A model generated the notes under the pieces. It ran no database searches and was not told the origin of the DNA. It saw only the letters and a list, made by a program, of their open reading frames with translations. This document shows, piece after piece, positions 4,010-64,000 of a stretch of DNA of 64,000 nucleotides. How positions within the stretch are numbered: position 1 is the stretch's first letter; each line of letters opens with the position of its first letter. The position numbers and the translations under genes are program-made. The DNA lies in assembly GCF_001194135.2 (NCBI RefSeq), contig NC_068982.1, positions 48,809,694 to 48,873,693 on the forward strand, given 5' to 3'. The stretch comes from Octopus bimaculoides. Its lineage: Eukaryota.

Positions 4010-4241
4010 AAGGCGGCTAGCTGGTAGAATCGTTAGCACGCCGGGCGAAATGCTTAGCAGTATTTCGTCTGCCGTTACATTCTGAGTTCAAATTCCGCCG
4101 AGGTCGACTTTGCCTTTCATCCTTTCGGGGTCGATAAATTAAGTACCAGTTACGCACTGGGGTCCATGTAATCGACTTAATCCGTTCGTCTGTCCTTGTT
4201 TGTTCCCTCTATGTTTAGCCCCTTGTGGGCAATAAAGAAAT
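4010..4241 (+). mobile_element. SINE A, long tail, inserted in a SINE B head
   Basis: AAGGCGGC..TGGTAGAATCG (A-box-like), GAGTTCAAATTCC (B-box), tail GGGCAATAAAGAAAT. 15-bp TSD AAGAATGGTTGTGTG at 3992-4006 and 4242-4256. Confidence 0.9.
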
Positions 4242-5943: not shown

Positions 5944-7278
5944 TATGTGCATGCGTGCGTGCGAGTAGATGTATATATGGAAAAAAAAAGTCAAGGTAGA
6001 AAATGCTAAAATACTTTTATAAACAACATTTCAGTACCGGTTTCGATCCTTGAGATCTTTTCAACTATAAATATGGATAACAAATTTTGGAAAAATTAAA
6101 TTTTGGCAAATTTAAATGGAAAGTCTTTTTAAAAACATATTTTCACAGTGTTCAAATAATACAAGGGGCTTTTTCCTTGTTTCTGTTTGTCTCTGTTTCT
6201 CTTGTTAACTCTTGTGGGTTCGAGGTCGTTGTGAATTCTTGGCGAAGAAGAAGAAGCAGCGGGAGTGCTATGATAGTAGCAGAGTGTTAATTGGTTAAGT
6301 GTCCTGAAAATGACCTGTTATTGACGAGAGTAGTGATTTGAATTCTTGAGAAACCCCTATATATAGATATACATANNNNNNNNNNNNNNNNNNNNNNNNN
6401 NNNNNNNNNNNNNNNNNNNNNNNNNNNNNNNNNNNNNNNNNNNNNNNNNNNNNNNNNNNNNNNNNNNNNNNNNNNNNNNNNNNNNNNNNNNNNNNNNNNN
6501 NNNNNNNNNNNNNNNNNNNNNNNNNNNNNNNNNNNNNNNNNNNNNNNNNNNNNNNNNNNNNNNNNNNNNNNNNNNNNNNNNNNNNNNNNNNNNNNNNNNN
6601 NNNNNNNNNNNNNNNNNNNNNNNNNNNNNNNNNNNNNNNNNNNNNNNNNNNNNNNNNNNNNNNNNNNNNNNNNNNNNNNNNNNNNNNNNNNNNNNNNNNN
6701 NNNNNNNNNNNNNNNNNNNNNNNNNNNNNNNNNNNNNNNNNNNNNNNNNNNNNNNNNNNNNNNNNNNNNNNNNNNNNNNNNNNNNNNNNNNNNNNNNNNN
6801 NNNNNNNNNNNNNNNNNNNNNNNNNNNNNNNNNNNNNNNNNNNNNNNNNNNNNNNNNNNNNNNNNNNNNNNNNNNNNNNNNNNNNNNNNNNNNNNNNNNN
6901 NNNNNNNNNNNNNNNNNNNNNNNNNNNNNNNNNNNNNNNNNNNNNNNNNNNNNNNNNNNNNNNNNNNNNNNNNNNNNNNNNNNNNNNNNNNNNNNNNNNN
7001 NNNNNNNNNNNNNNNNNNNNNNNNNNNNNNNNNNNNNNNNNNNNNNNNNNNNNNNNNNNNNNNNNNNNNNNNNNNNNNNNNNNNNNNNNNNNNNNNNNNN
7101 NNNNNNNNNNNNNNNNNNNNNNNNNNNNNNNNNNNNNNNNNNNNNNNNNNNNNNNNNNNNNNNNNNNNNNNNNNNNNNNNNNNNNNNNNNNNNNNNNNNN
7201 NNNNNNNNNNNNNNNNNNNNNNNNNNNNNNNNNNNNNNNNNNNNNNNNNNNNNNNNNNNNNNNNNNNNNNNNNNNNNN

Positions 7279-22071: not shown

Positions 22072-22700
22072 CAGGGTGTGTTGAATAAACTAACGTCTAA
22101 ATTACGCAAAAATGAAAATAATACTGACATCTCATTTTAACAGATACATTTGTAAAATTTCATAAAAATATCTTGAAATACCAAAGAGTAGATTTATTCA
22201 ATAGAATCGTCATTGGCTTCAACTACAGACGCCAAACGACTTCGGAATCTCCTGTAACTCTTCAGGACGGTCTCCTTAAGTTGGTGAATGCTGCCATAAT
22301 CTCTGCCTTCAGTTAATCTTTGGTGTTACAAGGAGTTTTGTTGGTCTCTCGCTTAACTGTGCCCCCCGCTACACACACACACAATAATCAAGGGGGTTGC
22401 AGTCTGGGGAGTGCGGTAGCCAGATGTTAGGAGTGATGTGGTCGCAGATCTTGTCTGACAGCCATGACTTGGTTCCCCTGCTTGTGTTTCATGGTGTGGA
22501 GTCCTGTTGCCAGACACAGGGTCTCTCAACAGCCACTCTCTTGACCCAGTGCAGCACTACCTCCTCCATGCACTTGATGTAGGCCTCCATGTTGAGGCTA
22601 AGACTGTGTGGTAAGATGAATGGAGGCATAACTTCGCCATCACTAGTGATCACTCCAAACAGTATGAGCTGACTGGATGTGTGCTTTTATCATTCTTAGT
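22072..22700 (-). pseudogene. Tc1/mariner DD37D (maT-type) transposase C-terminal half with 3' TIR
   Basis: FGVITSDGEVMPPF, WQQDSTP..SPDCNPLDY with 37 residues counted between the last two Asp. Terminal TA-CAGGGTG at 22070. Confidence 0.8.
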
Positions 22701-22879
22701 ACATGTCCTCAGATTCTTTTCTGCTGTAGACACAAGGCCAGAAATTTTTGGAGATGGTCAGTTGATTAGATCGACCCCAGTACGCAAATAGTACTTAATT
22801 TATCGACCCCGAAAGGATGAAAGGCAAAGTCGACCTCGGCGGTATTTGAACTCAGAACATAAAGACAGACGAAATACCG

Positions 22880-24503
22880 ATTTCTTTATTACCCATAAAG
22901 GGCTATACAAAGAATTTTTAAGACATCACAAAACATAAAGACAGTACAAAACGCCAACATAAAATCGGGGTAATTAAAATAAAATGATAATATGCAAGAA
23001 TGAAAAAAGAATGAGGCGCAATGTCCACTCGATCCCCAAAGTCGGGTGGTTACATTTATCCAGTTTTTCACTTTTACGTTCAACGTCATGTAAACATTTT
23101 AACGGTTTTGTAACTCAAAAAATGCAAACTCTCGCGTTACCTTTCTTCCATTAATCAGTTACTTCCGTCTTTATCAACTGCAAATAATCAGTTCTCGGGG
23201 GTGGTGTCTCCACCAACCATACTCGTTTCGTTATTATATTTTCACCAAGTTCTTTTATGTACTCCCAGTAGTTTTCCTCATGTAGCAAAATGCATTTCTC
23301 AGCGCATTTCTCAGGCATTTTCACTCTTATTATTTCTTCTAACCTCTCGACTTTTCTCTCTATTTGCTCGCAATTCTCGTACTTTATCAAAAACCCCTTG
23401 TATTTCACATCTTTCTCCGTTCTCTCCTCCTCTTCTTGTTTATTATTAGTTTCTGGCTTTTTTAAATTTCTTTTTTGTTTTCCGTTGACCGTTTCATGTG
23501 ACTTATTTTTCCTTCGCCTTTTAGGGTTAGTAGCTCCATTTTCGTTCTTCTCCTTTGTTTTCTGTTTCACACATCTGTCTCTTTTATTTCCTCAGTGTGG
23601 TCTACAATTTTTTCTTCTTCTGCTTGTGTTTCTCTTGCTATGGCTGTGTGAACTCATATAGGGGGCATTTGGTCTTCATATGACCTCTCTCCCCGCATAT
23701 ATAACAATTTGGTTTTCTTCCCTCGACTGCAACATTTAACGTTCTCTCATCCTCCACTTCTATCTGGTAGGGAATTTTTCTATGTCCTCGAATGTGGCAA
23801 AAAGCCACATTTCGAGTCCAAATCCCCACCATTTGCACACTTTTGATTTCGCCACTGGTCTCAATTCCGGCTCCTCCTTGGTTGCAGCCAGCACTGTTGC
23901 AATCAACCACTCTGGTTTAATTTCTGGTGTAACTCTGGGAATACGTATTTTCACACTTCTTCTTCCTCTATAACTTGGTAGCAATGCTATTTTTTCACTT
24001 CTTACAATGTTGGTCGCATGCTTGGTTGCCTCTTCTATAGTGGCGAACCTCACCTCAACCGTACCGAACTTTCTTCCTCTGTTGATGTACGTGACTTCAT
24101 TGACAATTTCACTCAAGCACTCTTCGATTTCCTCTTCCGTCACCATTTCAATTTTACAGGGTTCAACAGCCTGTGTACGATACACAACTGTCCTCAGAAT
24201 TTTGTTTTCTTTAGTCTCTTTTGGGGGACACAATTTGTATGAGTCTCCCTCAACTTCTATCAAATTCCTGCTTCTGGTCACCTCCTCCATATCCAACTTG
24301 GTTTCCAGCGGCACTGGCTTCCTCACCGCTGTGGCCCTGGCGTAGCTCTCCATACTGGAGACACTACCACTTGCCATAGCTGGGAAAAAATGCAGCAGCT
24401 CACGTGAAACGTAACCGTAATAATTCCACAAAATCACAATTATTTACCGAGACACTTTTCACAAAGTAACACAACAGTATTCACAATAATTCACAGAGCC
24501 GTT
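22880..24503 (-). mobile_element. ORF1-only (half-L1/HAL1-like) non-LTR retroelement, copy 1
   Basis: About 125-nt 5' leader, degenerate ORF1, about 220-nt 3' UTR ending AGCCCTTTATGGGTAATAAAGAAAT. Junctions are ATACCG and ATACCA (6-bp TSD-like, one mismatch) inside a SINE A head. No ORF2 sequence. Second copy at 60647-62143. Confidence 0.85.
23099..24377 (-). pseudogene. L1/Tx1-type ORF1 protein (RRM-like regions, CCHC zinc knuckle, charged linker, C-terminal domain), frameshifted
   Basis: Pieces in ORFs 23760-24437, 23638-23910 and 23151-23570. N-terminal MAS..SYARA, RRM-like TYINRGRKFGTVEVRFATIEEA, knuckle CYICGERGHMKTKCP. Several frameshifts and a stop. Confidence 0.8.
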
Positions 24504-24829
24504 ATACCACGAAGCAATTCGACCGGCATACTAACGTTTCTGCCAGCTCGCCGCCTTACATGTCCACAGACTGACACCCTAATTCACTGAAATGTTCGTA
24601 TTGGAGCTTCCAACGCGAATACCAAGCAGTACAGCATGTCATTTCCAAACTTCTGGCAGAGTGAATTGCGTCATGGTGCTGATTTTCTCACAGACGGTGC
24701 CCAACTAAAACTTCTATACTGTATAGTAGACAAAATCAAAAGCAAACAATGCGCAAAATTAAAATATAAAATGGCGACAATTTACCCATCGCACCCTGTG
24801 TGTGTATGTGTGTGTGTATATATATATAT

Positions 24830-42579: not shown

Positions 42580-43175
42580 CACTCCTACAGAATACTCTAT
42601 CTAAATACGATCTGGACGACCCAATGCGGTTGCTCCATGTCCACATTGGCACATTCGAGTGGTCCAGTCAGACAGTTGGAAACGTCTGAGCAGGTCTTTG
42701 AGGCATTTTCATCCCCTCCTATTACTATCTGTGCCCACGTAGTGGAGATGCTTGTCCGGGGTAGCGTCCCAATCCCCCACTAAATGTAAAAGTCGAGACG
42801 TTCCCAGGAAAACCTCTAGACGTCGAAAGAAATCTGGCCAACCTGTTAAGGACGGTGCATAAACTGCTATCAGTTTAGGCACTGCACACCCATTACTACC
42901 CACCCATTACTGCCATCGACATCTAAGACGACCAGCCTATCCTCCGGGTCTAGGAAAATTGCTCTTACTTTGAGGTCTGGACTCTTCCGAAGAAGCGCTG
43001 CAGCAGACACGGAGAAAAATAAATGTCGAAATGTCCGCCGAACATGTGCTGGAGGGCCCGCGAACTATGGAGTCTGGTCTCGCTGATGGCTATGATATGC
43101 AGATTTTGTGACTTGATGTCATTGTTTCCAAGGCGAGCCCAAGCCACGTACATTTATACTGCCTATTTTGAGCAT
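42580..43175 (-). pseudogene. Tx1/L1-clade LINE ORF2 N-terminal apurinic-like endonuclease (APE) fragment
   Basis: Across frames: MLKIGSINVRGLGSPWKQ, HIIAISETRL, LIAVYAP, LVGDWDA (GDFN-like), WTWSNRIGSSRSYLDRVF (SRID-like). These are APE motifs in the expected order. Confidence 0.85.
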
Positions 43176-43364: not shown

Positions 43365-44242
43365 CAGAGAGAGAGAGATAGACAGAGAGAGAGAGAGATA
43401 GACAGAGAGAGAGAGATAGACAGAGAGAGAGAGATAGACAGAGAGAGAGAGATAGACAGAGAGACAGTGAGACAGAGAGAGAGAGATAGACAGACAGACA
43501 GTGAGACAGACAGACAGTGAGACAGACAGAGACAGTGAGACAGACAGACAGACAGTGAGACAGACAGACAGACAGTGAGACAGACAGACAGACAGTGAGA
43601 CAGACAGACAGACAGTGAGACAGACAGANNNNNNNNNNNNNNNNNNNNNNNNNNNNNNNNNNNNNNNNNNNNNNNNNNNNNNNNNNNNNNNNNNNNNNNN
43701 NNNNNNNNNNNNNNNNNNNNNNNNNNNNNNNNNNNNNNNNNNNNNNNNNNNNNNNNNNNNNNNNNNNNNNNNNNNNNNNNNNNNNNNNNNNNNNNNNNNN
43801 NNNNNNNNNNNNNNNNNNNNNNNNNNNNNNNNNNNNNNNNNNNNNNNNNNNNNNNNNNNNNNNNNNNNNNNNNNNNNNNNNNNNNNNNNNNNNNNNNNNN
43901 NNNNNNNNNNNNNNNNNNNNNNNNNNNNNNNNNNNNNNNNNNNNNNNNNNNNNNNNNNNNNNNNNNNNNNNNNNNNNNNNNNNNNNNNNNNNNNNNNNNN
44001 NNNNNNNNNNNNNNNNNNNNNNNNNNNNNNNNAGACAGACAGTGAGATAGACAGACAGTGAGATAGACAGACAGAGAGATAGACAGACAGAGAGATAGAC
44101 AGACAGAGAGATAGACAGACAGAGAGATAGACAGACAGAGAGATAGACAGACAGAGAGATAGACAGACAGAGAGATAGATTGACAGACAGACAGATAGAC
44201 AGAAATAGTTAGACAGAGAGATAGATAGACAGAGAGATAGAT
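43323..44242. repeat. Compound (GATA)/(GACA)/(GA) microsatellite with 16-18-mer higher-order units and a gap
   Basis: Direct inspection. Source of the spurious LSV/SLC ORFs. Confidence 0.95.
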
Positions 44243-44808
44243 AAGCTTTATTAGCCACACAGGGCCGAACGCAGAGGGACAAAATGCAATGTAGAGATTT
44301 TTTTTTTTCGTAAAAAAAAAAAAATTCTATCAAAAGCGATCGTGTAAACAAGCGATCAGAACTGATCGTGTATCAGAGAAAATATCATAAATGTAAAAAA
44401 CAGATTAGGTTTATGCGTGGAAAGAAAAGCCTACGGAAAAGAACACGGTAACCTCAGGCACGGAGGGAAAAACACGAGAGCAAAGTACTCTCTCTCTTTT
44501 CGATTTACAGGATCATGCTCAAAGTGATTTTGTCATTCACGCGTACCATCTTTGCTACATTCACCCACTTTTCATTGAAACTTTCACGAGACAAAACTTG
44601 CCTCTCTATTCTCACTTTCCTTTTTAAGTGGTACTTGAAAAAGTTGATTAGCGATTGGCCAGAGAGGAAAGTGTTTGTCTGTAAACCTTTTGTTCGAGTC
44701 CACCACCACACATTCTTTCACCATGGCTACTAGGCGGACTCATCCCACACGCAACAGCAGCCGCTCAGCATAAGCCCACGGGTCCGAAATGGTTGGACAC
44801 TGCACGAC
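44243..44808 (-). mobile_element. Tx1/L1-clade LINE 3' end (ORF2 C-terminus plus 3' UTR)
   Basis: VVQCPTISDPWAYAERLL and WWTRTKGLQTNTFLSGQSLINFFKYHLKRKVRIER..MIL* (stop at 44505). UTR ends GGCCCTGTGTGGCTAATAAAGCTT abutting a TATC/TGTC microsatellite. Confidence 0.75.
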
Positions 44809-49909: not shown

Positions 49910-50100
49910 TGGTTGAATCGTTACCGCACCGGAAAAATACCTAGTGGCATTCTATCGACTTTACGTTCTGAGTTCAAATGCCTCAGAGGTCGACTTTGCT
50001 TTCGATCCCTTTGGGACTCAAAATAAGTATCACTTATGCACTGGGGTTGATGTAATCGACTTAATCACTGCCACAAAATTACTGGCCTTGTGCCAAAATT
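49910..50100 (+). mobile_element. SINE A, short tail, diverged
   Basis: TTCTGAGTTCAAAT B-box, central block and tail GGCCTTGTGCC. Confidence 0.75.
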
Positions 50101-51304
50101 TCAAATGAATATTTGTTCGAATATTTTACGTTCTGAACCATTGTCCGGTTAAACTCAACCACGCAGTTCGTAGGTAATACGCAACTTTAGCGATTTTTAA
50201 TCATGTTCCAATATTACTAGCATAAAGCCTGTTCTCTGCTTTAATGATTGCTTATTCCCAAGGAGTGGGGGAGGGAGGTAGAATGGTGGCTGGTGGTCAT
50301 GGAGTAAGATTCAGAACAATATCCATTTAGTATTGTTTTAAATCATCTGGCTCTGTTGATGTCTGTTGTTCGTGTTTATAGTTTATTTCACCACTCTCCA
50401 GAGAAGTTTTGTACGTGTTCGCTTGACTCTTTAGTATTTTATTCCAAATTTACAGCAAGCCATAGATCTCAAACGTTAACAAACTAATGGAATGTTGCAC
50501 TATTACTCTTCGCTCGACATGCAATTAAATCTCCCCCCCCCCCCNNNNNNNNNNNNNNNNNNNNNNNNNNNNNNNNNNNNNNNNNNNNNNNNNNNNNAAA
50601 AAAAAACGTATGTTGAAGCAGTCAAGAACAAACTGCGACCTGCAGGACTTTCTGAATGGCACGCCTAACGAAAAATTAACTTGAAATTTATTAACTCTTT
50701 TTTTTTTTTTTAGTAATGCAGTCCGCCTGTTGAAGAGTAATGTCTCACGCAACACGTTTCTCGAAAAAGGTTGCCCATACCTACTCTAAACTCTTAAAAA
50801 TGAGGAGTGAGAGATAGTGGTATAATGTAGTCTGAGATTCACTACAGCCGAACGCATCTAATCACGTTTTTGCTGCATCATGTCGGACCTTGGGTTAAAC
50901 AACTGTTATCACAACTTGTTTCAGGAACCACGAAGGAGCATTCCATTTGGTTCCGTTCCTCGATTAGCTAGAATTAGCTGACCAATTTTCTCATAAACAA
51001 ACCTTTGTGTTAGATTCTCCGTCAGTCTCGAGCACGAAAGGTTGACATGTAAAGATGACTTCGGCGGAATTTGAACTCGGAGCGCTCCGAGGCTGAACGA
51101 AAGACATTAGGTATTCTATGTTGCCTTGCCTTCATTCCTCATTTCCTGATGAAATAGTAGAGACGAAGTTGCAGCATACGATGTAACTCGGGCATTTAAA
51201 CCTGGCTATGCTCAACCCTCTCCAGAACCTGAATACAATTGATTTCCTCCAGAAGCGGTTGCATGCCAGGACAAGTGGCCTTCTGCCATGCTCACTATCA
51301 CGTT

Positions 51305-57300: not shown

Positions 57301-57574
57301 CAAGGATGATAAAGATTGGCACCAGGGTTGTCGCAAGCGTTGTTGTCCAAATGCTGAGAGCGGAGAGGAGACTGGTGCAGTAAAACATCTAGTTTATTTC
57401 AACCAACCCACTGTCCAGGATTTGTAATATTGTTTTAATGCACTCGAAAGTTGTCCTTGACGTAATTTGAAATCAGAGCGGAGAGACCCGGAACAAATAC
57501 CAAAAGACGTCCCAGAGACTACCATTTTGCTGCCTCGCTTTTTGAAACCAAATATTCAAATCAGACATTGGTTT

Positions 57575-57790
57575 CAAATTTTGGCATAAGGCCAACAAAT
57601 TCGGGGGAGAGGGAGGGGTGCTAGACCGACCACATCGACCCTAGTGCTTAACTGGTACTTATTTTATCGACCCCGAAAGGATGAAAGATAAAGTAGACCC
57701 GGCGGAATTTGAACAGTGATGAACATAAATACGGATGAAATGTTACTAAACATTTTGTCCGGCGTACAAACGATTCTGTCAGCTAGCTTC
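57575..57790 (-). mobile_element. SINE A, short tail
   Basis: TATCGACCCCGAAAGGATGAAAG..GGCGGAATTTGAAC. Confidence 0.75.
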
Positions 57791-59058: not shown

Positions 59059-59738
59059 NNNNNNNNNNNNNNNNNNNNNNNNNNNNNNNNNNNNNNNNNN
59101 NNNNNNNNNNNNNNNNNNNNNNNNNNNNNNNNNNNNNNNNNNNNNNNNNNNNNNNNNNNNNNNNNNNNNNNNNNNNNNNNNNNNNNNNNNNNNNNNNNNN
59201 NNNNNNNNNNNNNNNNNNNNNNNNNNNNNNNNNNNNNNNNNNNNNNNNNNNNNNNNNNNNNNNNNNNNNNNNNNNNNNNNNNNNNNNNNNNNNNNNNNNN
59301 NNNNNNNNNNNNNNNNNNNNNNNNNNNNNNNNNNNNNNNNNNNNNNNNNNNNNNNNNNNNNNNNNNNNNNNNNNNNNNNNNNNNNNNNNNNNNNNNNNNN
59401 NNNNNNNNNNNNNNNNNNNNNNNNNNNNNNNNNNNNNNNNNNNNNNNNNNNNNNNNNNNNNNNNNNNNNNNNNNNNNNNNNNNNNNNNNNNNNNNNNNNN
59501 NNNNNNNNNNNNNNNNNNNNNNNNNNNNNNNNNNNNNNNNNNNNNNNNNNNNNNNNNNNNNNNNNNNNNNNNNNNNNNNNNNNNNNNNNNNNNNNNNNNN
59601 NNNNNNNNNNNNNNNNNNNNNNNNNNNNNNNNNNNNNNNNNNNNNNNNNNNNNNNNNNNNNNTGTGAAATCGTGTGTTGAAACAGATGGCTGATAGTTAG
59701 TAAGGTGAGACACACATAAGAAAGAAGAAGGAAACAAA

Positions 59739-60331: not shown

Positions 60332-60646
60332 GTGTATACAAAATGTATGCATGTGTATATATCCATCCCCAAAGGATGAAAGTCAAAGTCAACCCCGACA
60401 AAATTTGAACTCACAATGTAATGAGGGGCGAAATGCCACTAAGCATTTTGCCCGGCATGCTAACGATTCTTTTTTTTCTTTTTTCCTACACTAGGCACAA
60501 GACCCAAAATTTTAGGGGAGGGGGCCAGTCGATTAGATCAACTCCAGTACGCAACTGGTACTTAATTTATCGATCCCGAAAGGATGAAAGGCAAAGTCGA
60601 CTTCGGCGGAATTTGAACTCAGAACGTAAAGACAGGCGAAATACCG

Positions 60647-62143
60647 ATTTCTTTATTACCCATAAAGGGCTATACAAAGAATTTTTAAGACATCACAAAA
60701 CATAAAGGCAGTACAAAACGCAAACATAAAATCGGGGTAATTAAAATAAAATGATAATATGCAAGAATGAAAAAAATGAGGCGAAACGTCCACTCGATCC
60801 CCGAAGTTGGGTGGTTACATTTATCCAGTTTTTCACTTTTACGTTCAACGTCATGTAAACATTTTAACGGTTTTGTAACTCAAAAAATTCAAATACTTGC
60901 GTTACCTTTCTTCCATTAATCATTGTTACATCCGTCCTTAACAACTGCAAATAATCAGTTCTCGGGGGTGGTGTCTCCACCAGCCATACCCGTTTCGTTA
61001 ATATATTTTCACCAAGTTCTTGTATGCGCTCCCAGCATCTTTCCTCACATATCAAAATGCATTTTTCAGCACATTTCTCTGGCATTTTCACTCTTATTAT
61101 TTCTCCCAACCTCTCGACTTTTCTCTCCATCTGCTCGCAATTCTTGTACTTTATCAAAAGCCCCTTGTATTTCACATCTTTATCCGTTCCGCCCTCCTCT
61201 TCTTGTACATTATTAGTTTCTGGCTTTTTTATCTCTTTTTTTGTTTTCTGTTGACCGTTCCTTTGACTTATTTTTCCTTCGCTTTTTAGGGTTAGTAGCT
61301 CCATTTTCGTTCTTCTCCTTTGTTTTCTCTGTTTCACACTTCTGTCTCTCTTTTATTTCCTCAGTGTGGTCTACAATTTTTTCTTCCTCTGTTTGTGCTT
61401 TCTCTTGCTGTGGCTGTGTGAACTCATATAGGGGGCATTTGGNNNNNNNNNNNNNNNNNNNNNNNNNNNNNNNNNNNNNNNNNNNNNNNNNNNNNNNNNN
61501 NNNNNNNNNNNNNNNNNNNNNNNNNNNNNNNNNNNNNNNNNNNNNNNNNNNNNNNNNNNNNNNNNNNNNNNNNNNNNNNNNNNNNNNNNNNNNCTTGGTA
61601 GTAATGCTATTTTTTCACTTCTTACAATGTTGGTTGCATGCTTGGTTGCCTCTTCTATAGTGGCGAACTTCACCTCAACCGTACCGAACTTTCTTCCTCT
61701 GTTGATGTACGTGGCTTCATTGACAATTTCACCCAGGCACTCCTCGATTTCCTCTTCCGTCACCATTTCAATTTTACAGGGTTCGACAGCCTGTGTACGA
61801 TACACAACTGTCCTCAGATTTTTTTCTTCTTTAGTCTCTTTTGGGAGACACAATTTGTATGAGTCTCCCTCAACTTCTATCAAATTCCTGCTTCTGGTCA
61901 CCTCCTCCATATCCAACTTGATTAACTTGGTTTCCAGCGGCACTGGCTTCCTCAGCGCAGTGGCCTTGGCGTAGCTCTCCATACTGGAGACACTCCTATT
62001 TGCCATAGCTGGGAAAAAATGCAGCAGCTCACGTGAAACGTGACAGTAATAATTCCACAAACTTCACAATTATTTACCGAGACAGTTGTCACAAAGTAAC
62101 ACAACCGTATTCACAATAATTCACAATAATTCACAGAGCCGTT
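60647..62143 (-). mobile_element. ORF1-only (half-L1/HAL1-like) non-LTR retroelement, copy 2
   Basis: Colinear with 22880-24503 (roughly 90% identical by eye), same ends, exact ATACCG duplication at 60641-60646 and 62144-62149. Internal N-gap at 61443-61594. Confidence 0.85.
60864..62006 (-). pseudogene. L1/Tx1-type ORF1 protein, copy 2 (gap covers most of the knuckle; at least one frameshift)
   Basis: ATG at 62006 (MANRSVSSMESYAKA). Near-identical translation to copy 1 with an in-frame 9-nt insertion. KCPLYEFTQPQQ visible after the gap. Stop at 60864-60866. Confidence 0.8.
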
Positions 62144-64000
62144 ATACCGCGAAGCAGTTCGACTGGCGTGCTAACGTTTATTTTTTCTTTATTGCCAACA
62201 AGGGGCTAAACATAGAGGGGACAAACATGAACAGACAAAGGGATTAAGTCGATTAGATCGACCCCAGTGTGTAACTGGTATTTATTTAATCGACCCCGAA
62301 AGTATGAAAGGCAAAGTCGACTTCGGTGGAATTTGAACTCAGAACGTAACGGCAGACGAAATAAGGCTATGCATTTTGCCCGGTGTGCTAACGTTTCTGC
62401 CAGCTCGCCGCCTTGACAGATGATGCTGACTATAATGCGATTGCACGCACGCGCATATACAATACATGTGGTAACTGACAGAATAAAGAGAAGAAATATG
62501 AAAAGTAAACGAAATTTAAAATCAAACCATTGAAGAAACAATGTTTTTATTCAGTTCGAGTGCCGGCAAGCAGTTTAATATTTGGAAGCTGCACTGAATT
62601 TTAATGTTAACTAAAAGCGTTGCCTTAAAAAATTCTTAGTAAATGAAAATGTAAATGCATTTGTTGTGAAAATGTAACCGCGAAACAAATTCCATAGTAA
62701 AGGTCTTCTCACGTTTTAGTATAAACGAACGTGTCAAATGAAATAGCACACATCTACATTTAACTCAACGCTGCTTAGATTGCCTCTAGTTAAATAAAAT
62801 TGCATACTGATGGTTAAATGATATTTTCATTATGTGTGTGTGTTTCTGTTCGCGCGTGCATAAAAATGAAAGATTGTGTACACACACATACATATGTATA
62901 TATATATATACACTTACATACATATATGTAATTATATATATAATTATATACACTTATATACATATATATATATATAATTATATATATATATATATATATA
63001 TNNNNNNNNNNNNNNNNNNNNNNNNNNNNNNNNNNNNNNNNNNNNNNNNNNNNNNNNNNNNNNNNNNNNNNNNNNNNNNNNNNNNNNNNNNNNNNNNNNN
63101 NNNNNNNNNNNNNNNNNNNNNNNNNNNNNNNNNNNNNNNNNNNNNNNNNNNNNNNNNNNNNNNNNNNNNNNNNNNNNNNNNNNNNNNNNNNNNNNNNNNN
63201 NNNNNNNNNNNNNNNNNNNNNNNNNNNNNNNNNNNNNNNNNNNNNNNNNNNNNNNNNNNNNNNNNNNNNNNNNNNNNNNNNNNNNNNNNNNNNNNNNNNN
63301 NNNNNNNNNNNNNNNNNNNNNNNNNNNNNNNNNNNNNNNNNNNNNNNNNNNNNNNNNNNNNNNNNNNNNNNNNNNNNNNNNNNNNNNNNNNNNNNNNNNN
63401 NNNNNNNNNNNNNNNNNNNNNNNNNNNNNNNNNNNNNNNNNNNNNNNNNNNNNNNNNNNNNNNNNNNNNNNNNNNNNNNNNNNNNNNNNNNNNNNNNNNN
63501 NNNTTTCTGTAAACAACTACGATCAATTACTGAAACACATATTTACGAAGTTCATAAATTTAAATATTCTGTACAAGATAGTTTTTAACGTGCTTTTATT
63601 TATACGATTTTTGGGCGTTCCATGTTCATCTCATTCATTCTTTGCATTGCTCTCTCTCTCTCATTCACACACTCCAGGTTTGATTTCGTTCCGAACTCGC
63701 ACACTTCGTTAATTTCCGTAAATAAATTTTCTATTATTTTTTTTTTTTTTTGGCACGCCGTGTTCAGCTCTATGTATTCGTAGTGAGTCACACACGCACA
63801 TGTGTGTGAGTGAAGGGGTGTGTTGTGCTGTCTACGTACATACATAAATACATATGCATACATCTTTTCTGTGTGTATATCTGCACGTGTGTGTGAGAGA
63901 GACAGACAGACAGAGAGATGTTTCAGTGACTCTCTCTCTCACACATACGTACAAGAAATGTATGACTATTTATGTATGTACGTATAATTGTCGACACACC

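What the first reader, a model, noticed from the sequence alone, without database searches (positions are those of the whole stretch)
22880..24503. ORF1-only retroelement present twice at the identical nucleotide inside a SINE head
Seen: a 1624-bp element and its homologue at 60647-62143 have the same two ends, encode only an RRM-like plus CCHC ORF1, and both split SINE A at GACGAAATACCG|, with ATACC(G/A) repeated at the other end. The outer flanks are unrelated, and the copies differ by scattered substitutions (about 10% by eye) while the N-terminal protein is nearly unchanged. Known: ORF1-only HAL1 elements exist, and Tx1-group L1-clade elements are often sequence-specific (Dewa, Keno, Kibi, Koshi). 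Inference: a HAL1-like family that either targets one SINE site or travels fused to it. I do not recall this being described in cephalopods, but could not check.
Basis: partly seen in the sequence, partly recalled or inferred. Interest (0 to 1): 0.88.

Follow-up and report, generated by a model that had tools for sequence, protein, structure and literature searches.

The report
Half-LINE lodged in an octopus SINE
Two copies of a 1.6-kb octopus retroelement that keeps only the first LINE gene (an RNA-binding ORF1) sit at exactly the same base inside a short repeat (SINE); further copies elsewhere suggest, though not conclusively, that this base is a preferred landing site.

Summary
Both copies lie on the minus strand at 22880-24503 and 60647-62143. 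They share both ends and split a roughly 250-bp SINE at the same base, with a 6-bp target duplication (CGGTAT). Homology stops at the SINE ends.

The element has a 126-nt 5'UTR, one ORF of about 427 codons, and a roughly 220-nt 3'UTR. The ORF encodes two RRM-like folds, a CCHC knuckle, a K/E-rich linker and a C-terminal domain. There is no ORF2. The organism is Octopus bimaculoides.

Related full-length LINEs in O. sinensis and O. vulgaris carry a homologous ORF1. Their ORF2 has APE, RT and zf-RVT domains and is closest to human L1 ORF2p. The element's last ~35 nt form a hairpin tail shared with those LINEs and with a second SINE type in the window. It is therefore a HAL1-like, trans-mobilised "half-LINE".

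A third copy, on another O. bimaculoides chromosome, has the same 3' junction. So does an ORF2-bearing relative in O. vulgaris, in a different SINE subtype. This favours a preferred insertion site over a fused unit, but the fused unit is not excluded. dN/dS of about 0.3 between lineages indicates a functional ORF1.

It is a new variant of known kinds (HAL1; target-preferring L1/Tx1-type LINEs).

The parts
22880..24503 (-). ORF1-only element, copy 1 (1624 bp). It is a pseudogene: a 1-nt deletion near 23776, an in-frame TAG at 23638-23640, further indels in the linker and near the C-terminus, and a 9-bp deletion (LIK) near 24300.
24378..24503 (-). 5'UTR of copy 1. It begins AACGGCTCTGTGAATTATTG and contains a T6 run (a potential pol III terminator) just before the ATG.
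23099..24377 (-). ORF1 of copy 1 (about 427 codons when intact). It encodes an N-terminal segment, two RRM-like beta-alpha-beta-beta-alpha-beta folds, a CCHC knuckle (CYICGERGHMKTKC), a K/E-rich linker and a C-terminal domain.
22880..23098 (-). 3'UTR of copy 1. It holds a conserved ~60-nt block with the hairpin CCAC(Y)CGA..TCGAGTGG. It also holds the terminal ~35-nt tail TCTTTGTATAGCCCTTTATGGGTAATAAAGAAAT, which has a 4-bp hairpin.
22874..22879 (-). Downstream copy of the 6-bp target-site duplication (CGGTAT on the minus strand).
24504..24509 (-). Upstream copy of the target-site duplication. It reads TGGTAT on the minus strand, a CpG to TpG change.
22714..22879 (-). Host SINE 1, 3' part (core plus A-type tail ..GGCCTTGTGTCTACAGCAGAAAAGAA).
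24504..24557 (-). Host SINE 1, 5' part (AAGGCGGCGAGCTGG..GGTAT). It carries the variants GTCGAATTGCTTCG, shared only with host SINE 2.
24558..24570 (-). 13-bp TSD of host SINE 1 (TCTGTGGACATGT). Its partner TCTGAGGACATGT lies at 22701-22713.
   Evidence: read directly from the sequence
60647..62143 (-). ORF1-only element, copy 2. It is interrupted by an assembly gap at 61443-61593. It has a 10-bp tandem duplication TGTGAATTAT in the 5'UTR. Outside the gap the ORF has one +1 A in an A-run.
60471..60646 (-). Host SINE 2, 3' part (core plus A-type tail). The TSD copy CGGTAT lies at 60641-60646.
62144..62179 (-). Host SINE 2, 5' part, starting at AAACGTTAGC ('site 1'). The TSD copy CGGTAT lies at 62144-62149.
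62180..62418 (-). SINE of the second type ('SINE-B'). Its 3' tail (..TAGCCCCTTGTTGGCAATAAAGAAA) matches the tail of the element. It abuts host SINE 2 at 'site 1'.

Best explanation
The feature is a non-autonomous 'half-LINE' of Octopus bimaculoides. It descends from an L1/Tx1-type LINE superfamily and has kept the 5'UTR, ORF1 and a 3'UTR, but has no ORF2.

Shown: ORF1 encodes two RRM-like domains, a CCHC knuckle, a charged linker and a C-terminal domain. The element's last ~35 nt fold into a small hairpin followed by AATAAAGAAAT. The same tail ends full-length relatives (ORF1 plus an APE-RT-zfRVT ORF2) and a co-resident SINE subfamily.

Inferred: its RNA is coated in cis by its own ORF1p. The ORF2 protein of an autonomous partner then copies it in trans, recognising the shared tail. 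This is the way HAL1 depends on L1 and the way stringent-type SINEs depend on their LINE.

Inferred: integration is by target-primed reverse transcription, in the SINE's orientation, at a preferred position in the SINE head. The first nick is opposite GCTTMG|CGGTAT and the second is 6 nt downstream. This gives the CGGTAT duplication.

On this reading the two copies in the window are two separate insertions into two copies of one SINE subfamily.
For: ORF1-only anatomy and domains.

One continuous ORF covering all domains is seen in a third copy. L001 (O. bimaculoides, CM046624.1) has residues 44-426 in one frame.

LINE ancestry. L002 (O. sinensis) has a homologous ORF1 (33% identity) followed by ORF2 fragments with APE and zf-RVT domains. 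L005 (O. vulgaris) has three tandem full-length copies with a 1132-aa ORF2 (Exo_endo_phos, RVT_1, zf-RVT). The best PDB relative of that ORF2 is human L1 ORF2p, E = 2e-71 over 866 residues.

Shared tail. The motif TAGCCCYTTRTGGGYAATAAAGAAA has 6 matches in the window against 0 expected. They are 2 element ends and 4 SINE-B ends. The same tail ends ORF2-bearing copies in L003.

The tail hairpin is kept through compensatory changes among three tail types. 89% of cells pair against 61% in shuffles, and no shuffle of 500 reaches the covariation score.

Purifying selection. dN/dS is 0.30 and 0.37 between the window lineage and L001.

Site preference.
- L001 has the same 3' junction, AAAGAAAT|CGGTATTTCG.
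- In O. vulgaris L003, a 5'-truncated ORF2-bearing LINE ends AAAGAAAT|TCGTATTTCG at the same SINE position. The host is a B-type SINE.
- Overall, 4 of 23 SINE copies in about 156 kb carry a tail-bearing element at this base, all in the SINE's orientation.
- Relatives also cluster at a second SINE-head position ('site 1', |CAGAAWCGTYAGCAC), with a 15-19-bp repeat of the site-1 sequence at each junction.
- The SINE flanks of the two window copies are about twice as diverged as the element: 12.2% against 5.8%, Fisher p = 0.002, and p = 0.0095 without CpG sites.
- A T6 run in the 5'UTR would stop pol III transcription of a fused unit.

Literature. Tx1-clade LINEs often insert into specific sequences, including other transposons (PMC4494074).
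Against: Both host SINEs share two or three variants in the 36 nt upstream of the insertion (GTCGAAYTGCTTCG against GGCGAAATGCTTAG). These variants are absent from the other SINE copies in the window. No empty SINE with those variants was seen. That is what a fused, co-propagating unit would give.

The excess flank divergence comes mostly from the fast-evolving SINE tail and the 36-nt 5' part. My own count from the alignment (not a tool output) is 9 of 38 tail positions and about 7.8% for the SINE core, which is close to the element's 5.8%. The core of host 1 and host 2 is 92% identical, against 88-90% to unrelated young SINEs.

SINE-B copies with the same tail sit at non-SINE sites, with 13-15-bp TSDs starting AAGAA. 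Another ORF1-only relative (L006) has a non-SINE target. The machinery is therefore not strictly site-specific.

The 5' junction is documented only for the two window copies. It is lost in a gap in L001 and was not found in L003.

No autonomous partner with a closely matching ORF1 was found. Only a handful of copies could be examined. The extra loci were fetched because they encode ORF1 homologues.
Confidence: 0.6

Rival explanations
1. Fused composite. One ancestral insertion into one SINE copy created a 1.9-kb SINE-element-SINE unit. That unit has since been retrotransposed as a whole through the SINE's own 3' tail, by the SINE's LINE partner. The identical junctions are then inherited, not re-created.
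For: Host-SINE variants are shared only by the two occupied copies, and no empty copy of that variant is seen. Each composite is bounded by SINE ends, and composite 1 has its own 13-bp TSD. L001 against copy 1 shows similar divergence in the element (84%) and the SINE part (83-85%). All three hosts have the A-type tail.
Against: An ORF2-bearing relative sits at the same base of a B-type SINE in another species. Relatives are repeatedly found at SINE heads. The flanks of copies 1 and 2 are about twice as diverged as the element, and the two SINE tails differ by about 24% (my count from the alignment) although the tail would be the part under selection. A T6 terminator lies about 120 nt into the element, and the 1.6-kb insert pushes apart the regions where the SINE's internal pol III promoter is presumed to lie. 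Both argue against pol III transcription of the unit.
Confidence: 0.25
2. Template-switch chimeras. During retrotransposition of a SINE RNA, the reverse transcriptase stops at a fixed position in the structured head. It jumps to the 3' tail of an element RNA, copies it, and jumps back. This would produce the same junctions repeatedly without any endonuclease specificity.
For: Tail-to-head chains of 5'-truncated elements occur in L003 (A|B|C|SINE). There is also a tandem array of full-length LINEs in L005. In L001 and L003 only the 3' junction is documented.
Against: The two window copies have a clean 6-bp duplication and the SINE 5' part in register. That would need two precise jumps with a 6-nt overlap. 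In L004, three copies of a 15-19-nt site-1 sequence fit staggered-nick TSDs, not jumps.
Confidence: 0.07
3. DNA-level duplication. The two copies are one insertion copied by segmental or tandem duplication within this 64-kb region.
For: The two copies lie 38 kb apart on the same strand and are 94% identical.
Against: Homology ends exactly at the SINE ends, with unrelated flanks. Host SINE 1 has its own TSD, while host SINE 2 starts at a different point and abuts other SINEs. A third copy with the same junction lies on another chromosome-scale record.
Confidence: 0.03
4. Host gene. The ORF is a domesticated RRM-CCHC gene or its processed pseudogenes, not a mobile element.
For: Gene predictors have called it as a protein in O. 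bimaculoides (P0001-P0007). dN/dS is below 1.
Against: There are multiple dispersed copies with defined ends, a TSD, frameshifts and stops. The 3' tail is shared with LINEs and SINEs. Homologous ORF1s lie directly upstream of APE-RT ORF2s.
Confidence: 0.02

Closest known systems
HAL1 (half-L1) of mammals
   Same: It is a non-autonomous LINE derivative that encodes only ORF1p and depends on an autonomous relative. It arose and persisted as its own lineage (PMC5753468). Here the ORF is under purifying selection, and the ORF1-only architecture is shared by several diverged families.
   Different: HAL1 derives from mammalian L1 with the type II (Transposase_22) ORF1p and ends in poly(A). This element has a type I (RRM+CCHC) ORF1p, no poly(A), and a specific hairpin tail. 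It sits at one position of a SINE.
Tx1-group, target-preferring L1-clade LINEs (Tx1L in Tx1D; Tx1-Mar in Mariner-N4_AMi; Keno, Kibi, Koshi)
   Same: Autonomous relatives have an APE-type ORF2 with an L1-like RT and a C-terminal zinc motif. ORF1 has RRM plus CCHC. Insertion recurs at one position of another repeated element, in one orientation (PMC4494074; PMC5203782).
   Different: The element itself has no ORF2. The target is the head of a SINE, which was not among the targets named in the papers read. Relatives with the same tail also insert elsewhere, so this is a preference rather than strict specificity. Clade membership by RT phylogeny was not tested.
Stringent-type LINE/SINE pairs that share a 3' tail (for example eel UnaL2/UnaSINE1; recalled from Kajikawa and Okada 2002, cited in PMC4494074)
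   Same: A short 3' hairpin followed by a fixed terminal sequence is shared by the LINE, the SINE and, here, the half-LINE. The hairpin stem is kept by compensatory changes.
   Different: The third partner here is protein-coding (ORF1-only). The SINE is both a fellow passenger of the LINE and the landing site.

Membership tests
HAL1-like (ORF1-only LINE derivative), functional sense | Encodes ORF1p and no ORF2p between defined element ends | tested here: met
   The 1624-bp element holds a 126-nt 5'UTR, an ORF of about 427 codons and a ~220-nt 3'UTR. There is no tblastn hit to ORF2 pieces inside it.
HAL1-like (ORF1-only LINE derivative), functional sense | ORF1 kept functional during amplification (purifying selection between lineages) | tested here: met
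   dN/dS is 0.30 (copy 1 against L001) and 0.37 (copy 2 against L001). L001 has residues 44-426 in one open frame. Only three copies were compared.
HAL1 proper (mammalian L1-derived) | ORF1p of the L1 type II kind (coiled coil, RRM, CTD; Pfam Transposase_22) and a poly(A) 3' end | tested here: not met
   Pfam finds only zf-CCHC and no Transposase_22. The 3' end is ..AATAAAGAAAT with no A-tail.
L1 clade / Tx1 group | Autonomous members encode an APE endonuclease and an L1-like RT | tested here: met
   This was tested in relatives only. The L005 ORF2 has Exo_endo_phos, RVT_1 and zf-RVT, and matches human L1 ORF2p at E = 2e-71 against R2 at 1e-24. L002 gives the same domains.
L1 clade / Tx1 group | RT sequence falls inside the Tx1 clade in a phylogeny with reference elements | not tested
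   No Repbase or Dfam reference set was available. An O. vulgaris annotation lists L1-Tx1 as an active group (PMC13282606), but that is not a test of these copies.
L1 clade / Tx1 group | Type I ORF1p: at least one RRM plus a CCHC knuckle | tested here: met
   zf-CCHC has E = 9e-5. The AlphaFold model has pLDDT 89.8 and shows two beta-alpha-beta-beta-alpha-beta units. The Foldseek top hits are tandem-RRM proteins (raver1, NONO, IMP3, hnRNP A1 UP1, HuC) with probability 0.98-1.0 but E-values of only 1e-3 to 1e-2.
Target-specific LINE | Independent insertions recur at one nucleotide of the target, in one orientation, with a constant TSD | tested here: inconclusive
   There are four junctions at the same SINE base. 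Three are from this family and one is an ORF2-bearing relative in another species and SINE subtype. All are in the SINE's orientation. Both junctions and the TSD were seen in only two. The independence of those two is not proven, because their host SINEs share variants.
Stringent LINE/SINE tail partnership | The same 3' terminal sequence and structure in the autonomous LINE and the dependent elements | tested here: met
   The tail motif is shared by the element, SINE-B and ORF2-bearing copies. The hairpin is supported by covariation. Recognition by the RT is inferred, not tested.

The most novel reading that the evidence does not exclude
Octopods may harbour an old, diversified and self-sustaining lineage of ORF1-only 'half-LINEs'. 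It would have its own conserved 3'UTR module, absent from the full-length LINEs sampled, and would be kept under purifying selection. At least one branch would have specialised in landing at one nucleotide of a SINE head. This would be a three-level parasitic hierarchy. The LINE supplies the enzyme, the half-LINE supplies its own RNA chaperone, and the SINE, itself a client of the same LINE superfamily, serves as a safe harbour.
Probability: 0.3. Interest if true: 0.7.

Novelty: new variant of a known kind. Interest (0 to 1): 0.55.

Why it matters
ORF1-only LINE derivatives are documented mainly as HAL1 in mammals. Here the same strategy appears in a mollusc, on a different ORF1 type (RRM+CCHC). 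In a small sample it occurs in several diverged families across two Octopus species. That suggests ORF1p supplied in cis gives a real advantage to a non-autonomous RNA.

If the recurrent landing position in a SINE head is confirmed, SINEs join the list of repeat targets used by L1/Tx1-type elements. The result would be a compact natural system for studying endonuclease and RNA-tail specificity.

It also matters for annotation. Octopus gene sets contain these ORFs as 'CCHC-type domain-containing' or 'uncharacterized' proteins. Nested SINE/half-LINE structures will also confound repeat-age and expression analyses in a genus where LINE activity in the brain is under discussion.

Tried and rejected
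- Exact-protein look-ups for P0003, P0001 and P0005 found no contig. Most O. bimaculoides family members therefore could not be placed in the genome.
- A junction-pattern scan of JGI metagenome contigs gave two chance AT-rich hits with no homology to the element.
- ARAGORN and Rfam found no tRNA or known RNA family in the window. The tRNA origin of the SINE head is therefore not verified here.
- The first AlphaFold run, on a 10-sequence alignment, was unusable (pLDDT 46.6). A PDB sequence search with the ORF gave only weak retroviral zinc-knuckle hits.
- Pfam found no family for the C-terminal domain.
- Two further word-indexed protein searches added no new family members.
- The Logan contigs L007 and L011 carry diverged relatives with no recognisable SINE head sequence in their 5' flanks. 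They say nothing about this family.
- Helitron and TIR-transposon readings were considered from the termini and rejected. There are no terminal inverted repeats, there is a TSD, and the tail is a LINE tail.
- I considered that the SINE arose from the composite by microhomology deletion. I rejected this because the element carries its own LINE tail immediately before the junction, and the SINE is continuous in at least 17 other copies.
Full report
**What is there**

BLASTN of copy 1 with 1 kb of flank against the window gives two collinear matches to copy 2. They are 22727-23672 <-> 60492-61442 (91.4%) and 23974-24539 <-> 61594-62179 (91.6%). A 151-N assembly gap in copy 2 separates them.

The homology includes the element and the SINE that hosts it, and stops at the SINE ends. 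A base-by-base alignment fixes the junctions on the minus strand. The 5' junction is ..GCTTCG(T/C)GGTAT|AACGGCTC.. and the 3' junction is ..GGGTAATAAAGAAAT|CGGTATTTCG... This is a 6-bp target-site duplication, CGGTAT. In copy 1 the upstream copy reads TGGTAT.

At least ten other SINE copies in the window have this sequence uninterrupted. Host SINE 1 has its own 13-bp duplication, TCTG(T/A)GGACATGT, at its outer ends. Host SINE 2 starts at an internal position and abuts other SINEs.

**The element**

It has a 126-nt 5'UTR, one long ORF and a roughly 220-nt 3'UTR, and there is no ORF2. Copy 1 is decayed, with several frameshifts, one in-frame stop and a 9-bp deletion. Outside its gap, copy 2 differs from an open frame by one extra A in an A-run.

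Protein searches identify the organism as Octopus bimaculoides. The closest proteins are seven or eight predicted 'CCHC-type' or uncharacterised proteins of that species, and none has RT or endonuclease domains.

One of these proteins could be placed on a chromosome-scale record (L001, CM046624.1). It is a third copy, 84% identical to copy 1. Residues 44-426 lie in a single open frame, so the RRM region, knuckle, linker and C-terminal domain belong to one ORF of about 427 codons.

Pfam recognises only the CCHC knuckle (E = 9e-5). With an 80-sequence alignment, AlphaFold gives a confident model of residues 1-205 (pLDDT 89.8). It contains two beta-alpha-beta-beta-alpha-beta units. Foldseek matches it mainly to tandem-RRM proteins with probability about 1, but with modest E-values (1e-3 to 1e-2) and low TM-scores. 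'RRM-like' is therefore supported at the fold level.

**Where it comes from**

A profile search of 1.84 billion representatives found 580 relatives. The 16 that were checked for a source name came from Octopus vulgaris, O. sinensis, O. bimaculoides or Argonauta hians, or from unnamed ENA, Logan or MetaClust records.

In O. sinensis (L002), a homologous ORF1 (33% identity) is followed by ORF2 fragments with an APE endonuclease and a zf-RVT motif. In O. vulgaris (L005), three full-length copies lie in tandem. One has a 1132-aa ORF2 with Exo_endo_phos, RVT_1 and zf-RVT. Its best solved relative is human L1 ORF2p (E = 2e-71 over 866 residues), far ahead of R2.

The parent superfamily is therefore L1-like. 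An RRM+CCHC ORF1 is the 'type I' kind that the literature ties to Tx1-like elements (PMC5203782). I did not run an RT phylogeny, so 'Tx1' remains a likely label, not a shown one.

**The 3' tail**

The motif has 6 matches in the window against 0 expected: two element ends and four SINE-B ends. The same tail ends ORF2-bearing LINE copies in O. vulgaris.

The tail contains a 4-bp stem with a 5-nt loop. Across three tail types (GCCC/GGGC, AGGC/GCCT, TGGC/GCCA), three of the four pairs change on both sides and stay paired. 89% of cells pair against 61% in shuffles, and slid controls collapse. The number of independent changes is small.

This is the anatomy of a stringent LINE/SINE partnership. Recognition of the tail by the partner's RT is my inference.

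**ORF1-only relatives**

O. vulgaris has at least four further ORF1-only elements: L003 B, L004 #1, L004 #2 and L006. Their ORF1 is 33-53% identical to this one.

Three of them (L003 B, L004 #1 and #2) share about 190 nt of 3'UTR with it, including a conserved hairpin block. I did not find that block in the full-length copies sampled. L006 has a variant tail resembling the A-type SINE tail.

Between the window lineage and L001, dN/dS is 0.30-0.37. Between the two window copies it is 0.57. The ORF was therefore under purifying selection while the family spread, as expected if ORF1p acts in cis on its own RNA.

**Targeted or fused?**

Evidence for a preferred site:
- L001 has the same 3' junction, AAAGAAAT|CGGTATTTCG, in an A-type SINE. 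Its 5' end is lost in a gap.
- In O. vulgaris L003, a 5'-truncated LINE with ORF2 ends AAAGAAAT|TCGTATTTCG at the same SINE position. The host is a B-type SINE.
- In about 156 kb surveyed, 4 of 23 SINE copies carry a tail-bearing element at this base, all in the SINE's orientation.
- Relatives cluster at a second position about 35 nt upstream ('site 1', |CAGAAWCGTYAGCAC). In L004, one SINE with a 12-bp outer TSD holds two different ORF1-only elements, with three copies of the 15-19-nt site-1 sequence. L008 shows the same arrangement.
- The SINE flanks of copies 1 and 2 are about twice as diverged as the element: 12.2% against 5.8%, p = 0.002, and p = 0.0095 without CpG sites.
- A T6 run early in the element would stop pol III transcription of a fused unit.

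Evidence for a fused unit:
- The two host SINEs share variants in the 36 nt upstream of the insertion that no other SINE copy in the window has. No empty copy of that variant was seen.
- The flank excess lies mostly in the fast-changing SINE tail. The cores are 92% identical, hardly more than their 88-90% identity to unrelated young SINEs.

The machinery is not strictly specific. SINE-B copies with the same tail have 13-15-bp TSDs starting AAGAA at non-SINE sites. The L006 element has a 10-bp TSD at a non-SINE site.

My reading is a strong site preference of this branch (about 0.6), with the fused unit as the main rival (about 0.25).

**Comparison with known systems**

The element works like HAL1, an ORF1-only dependent of a LINE (PMC5753468). 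It is not HAL1: the ORF1 type differs, there is no poly(A), and it has a specific tail.

It resembles Tx1-group elements that insert into other repeats, namely Tx1L in Tx1D, Tx1-Mar in a Mariner family, and others in LTR elements (PMC4494074). A SINE head was not among the targets named in the papers I read. The cephalopod papers searched describe RTE, Dong/R4, CR1 and L1-Tx1 groups, but no ORF1-only elements.

I rate it a new variant of known kinds.

**Limits**

Only three copies of the family itself and a few relatives could be examined. The extra loci were reached through ORF1 homologues, which biases what was seen. The tRNA origin of the SINE head was not confirmed. No close autonomous partner was identified, and no step of the mechanism was tested experimentally.

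Noticed in passing
window 62180-62418 (-) and 60340-60470 (-): Host SINE 2 is part of a chain. A B-type SINE ends ..AATAAAGAAAAAAT directly against host SINE 2 at AAACGTTAGC. The A-rich tail of host SINE 2 in turn abuts another SINE at GAATCGTTAGC. The same head position ('site 1') is a junction in L004 and L008. SINE heads therefore seem to be a general hot spot for nested insertions of this tail family.
   Followed up: partly
window 42584-42995 (-) and 44526-44808 (-): tblastn finds fragments of a LINE ORF2 from the same superfamily. One is an APE region (58-89% identity to the O. sinensis copy) and one is the RT C-terminus (about 59%). An N gap and low-complexity sequence separate them. Their order suggests two different copies.
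   Followed up: no
window SINE tails, e.g. 22718-22739 (-), 4218-4240 (+), 50084-50105 (+), 57572-57593 (-): Three SINE tail types coexist. They share a CTTGT loop, but their stems differ by compensatory changes (AGGC/GCCT, GCCC/GGGC, TGGC/GCCA). This suggests three sub-lineages of one LINE superfamily, each with its own SINE clients.
   Followed up: partly
window 22489-22653 (-): A 54-aa ORF (..ITSDGEVMPPFILPHSLSLNMEAYIKCMEEVVLHWVKRVAVERPCVWQQDS..) lies next to composite 1. From memory it looks like a fragment of a Tc1/mariner-type DDE transposase. This was not checked against any library.
   Followed up: no
L005 4600-19300 (O. vulgaris OX597840.1): Three full-length LINE copies (ORF1 plus ORF2) lie head to tail with a period of about 5.28 kb. 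This could be tail-directed insertion, template jumping or plain tandem duplication.
   Followed up: no
L003 3500-8540 (O. vulgaris OX597820.1): A chain of three elements, each starting exactly after the previous tail. It comprises a LINE 3' end, then a 5'-truncated ORF1-only element beginning at its ATG region, then a 5'-truncated LINE beginning inside APE, then a SINE.
   Followed up: partly
window 22880-23075 (-) and homologues in L001, L003, L004: A ~60-nt block in the 3'UTR of ORF1-only elements is conserved across families and species. It contains the hairpin CCAC(Y)CGA-loop-TCGAGTGG. It was not found in the full-length LINEs sampled, and its function is unknown.
   Followed up: partly
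window, many places (e.g. 6376-7278, 43629-44032, 59059-59662, 63002-63503): There are nine runs of N (2865 bases in all), often flanked by microsatellite-like sequence. This draft-quality assembly limits what can be said about element integrity.
   Followed up: no
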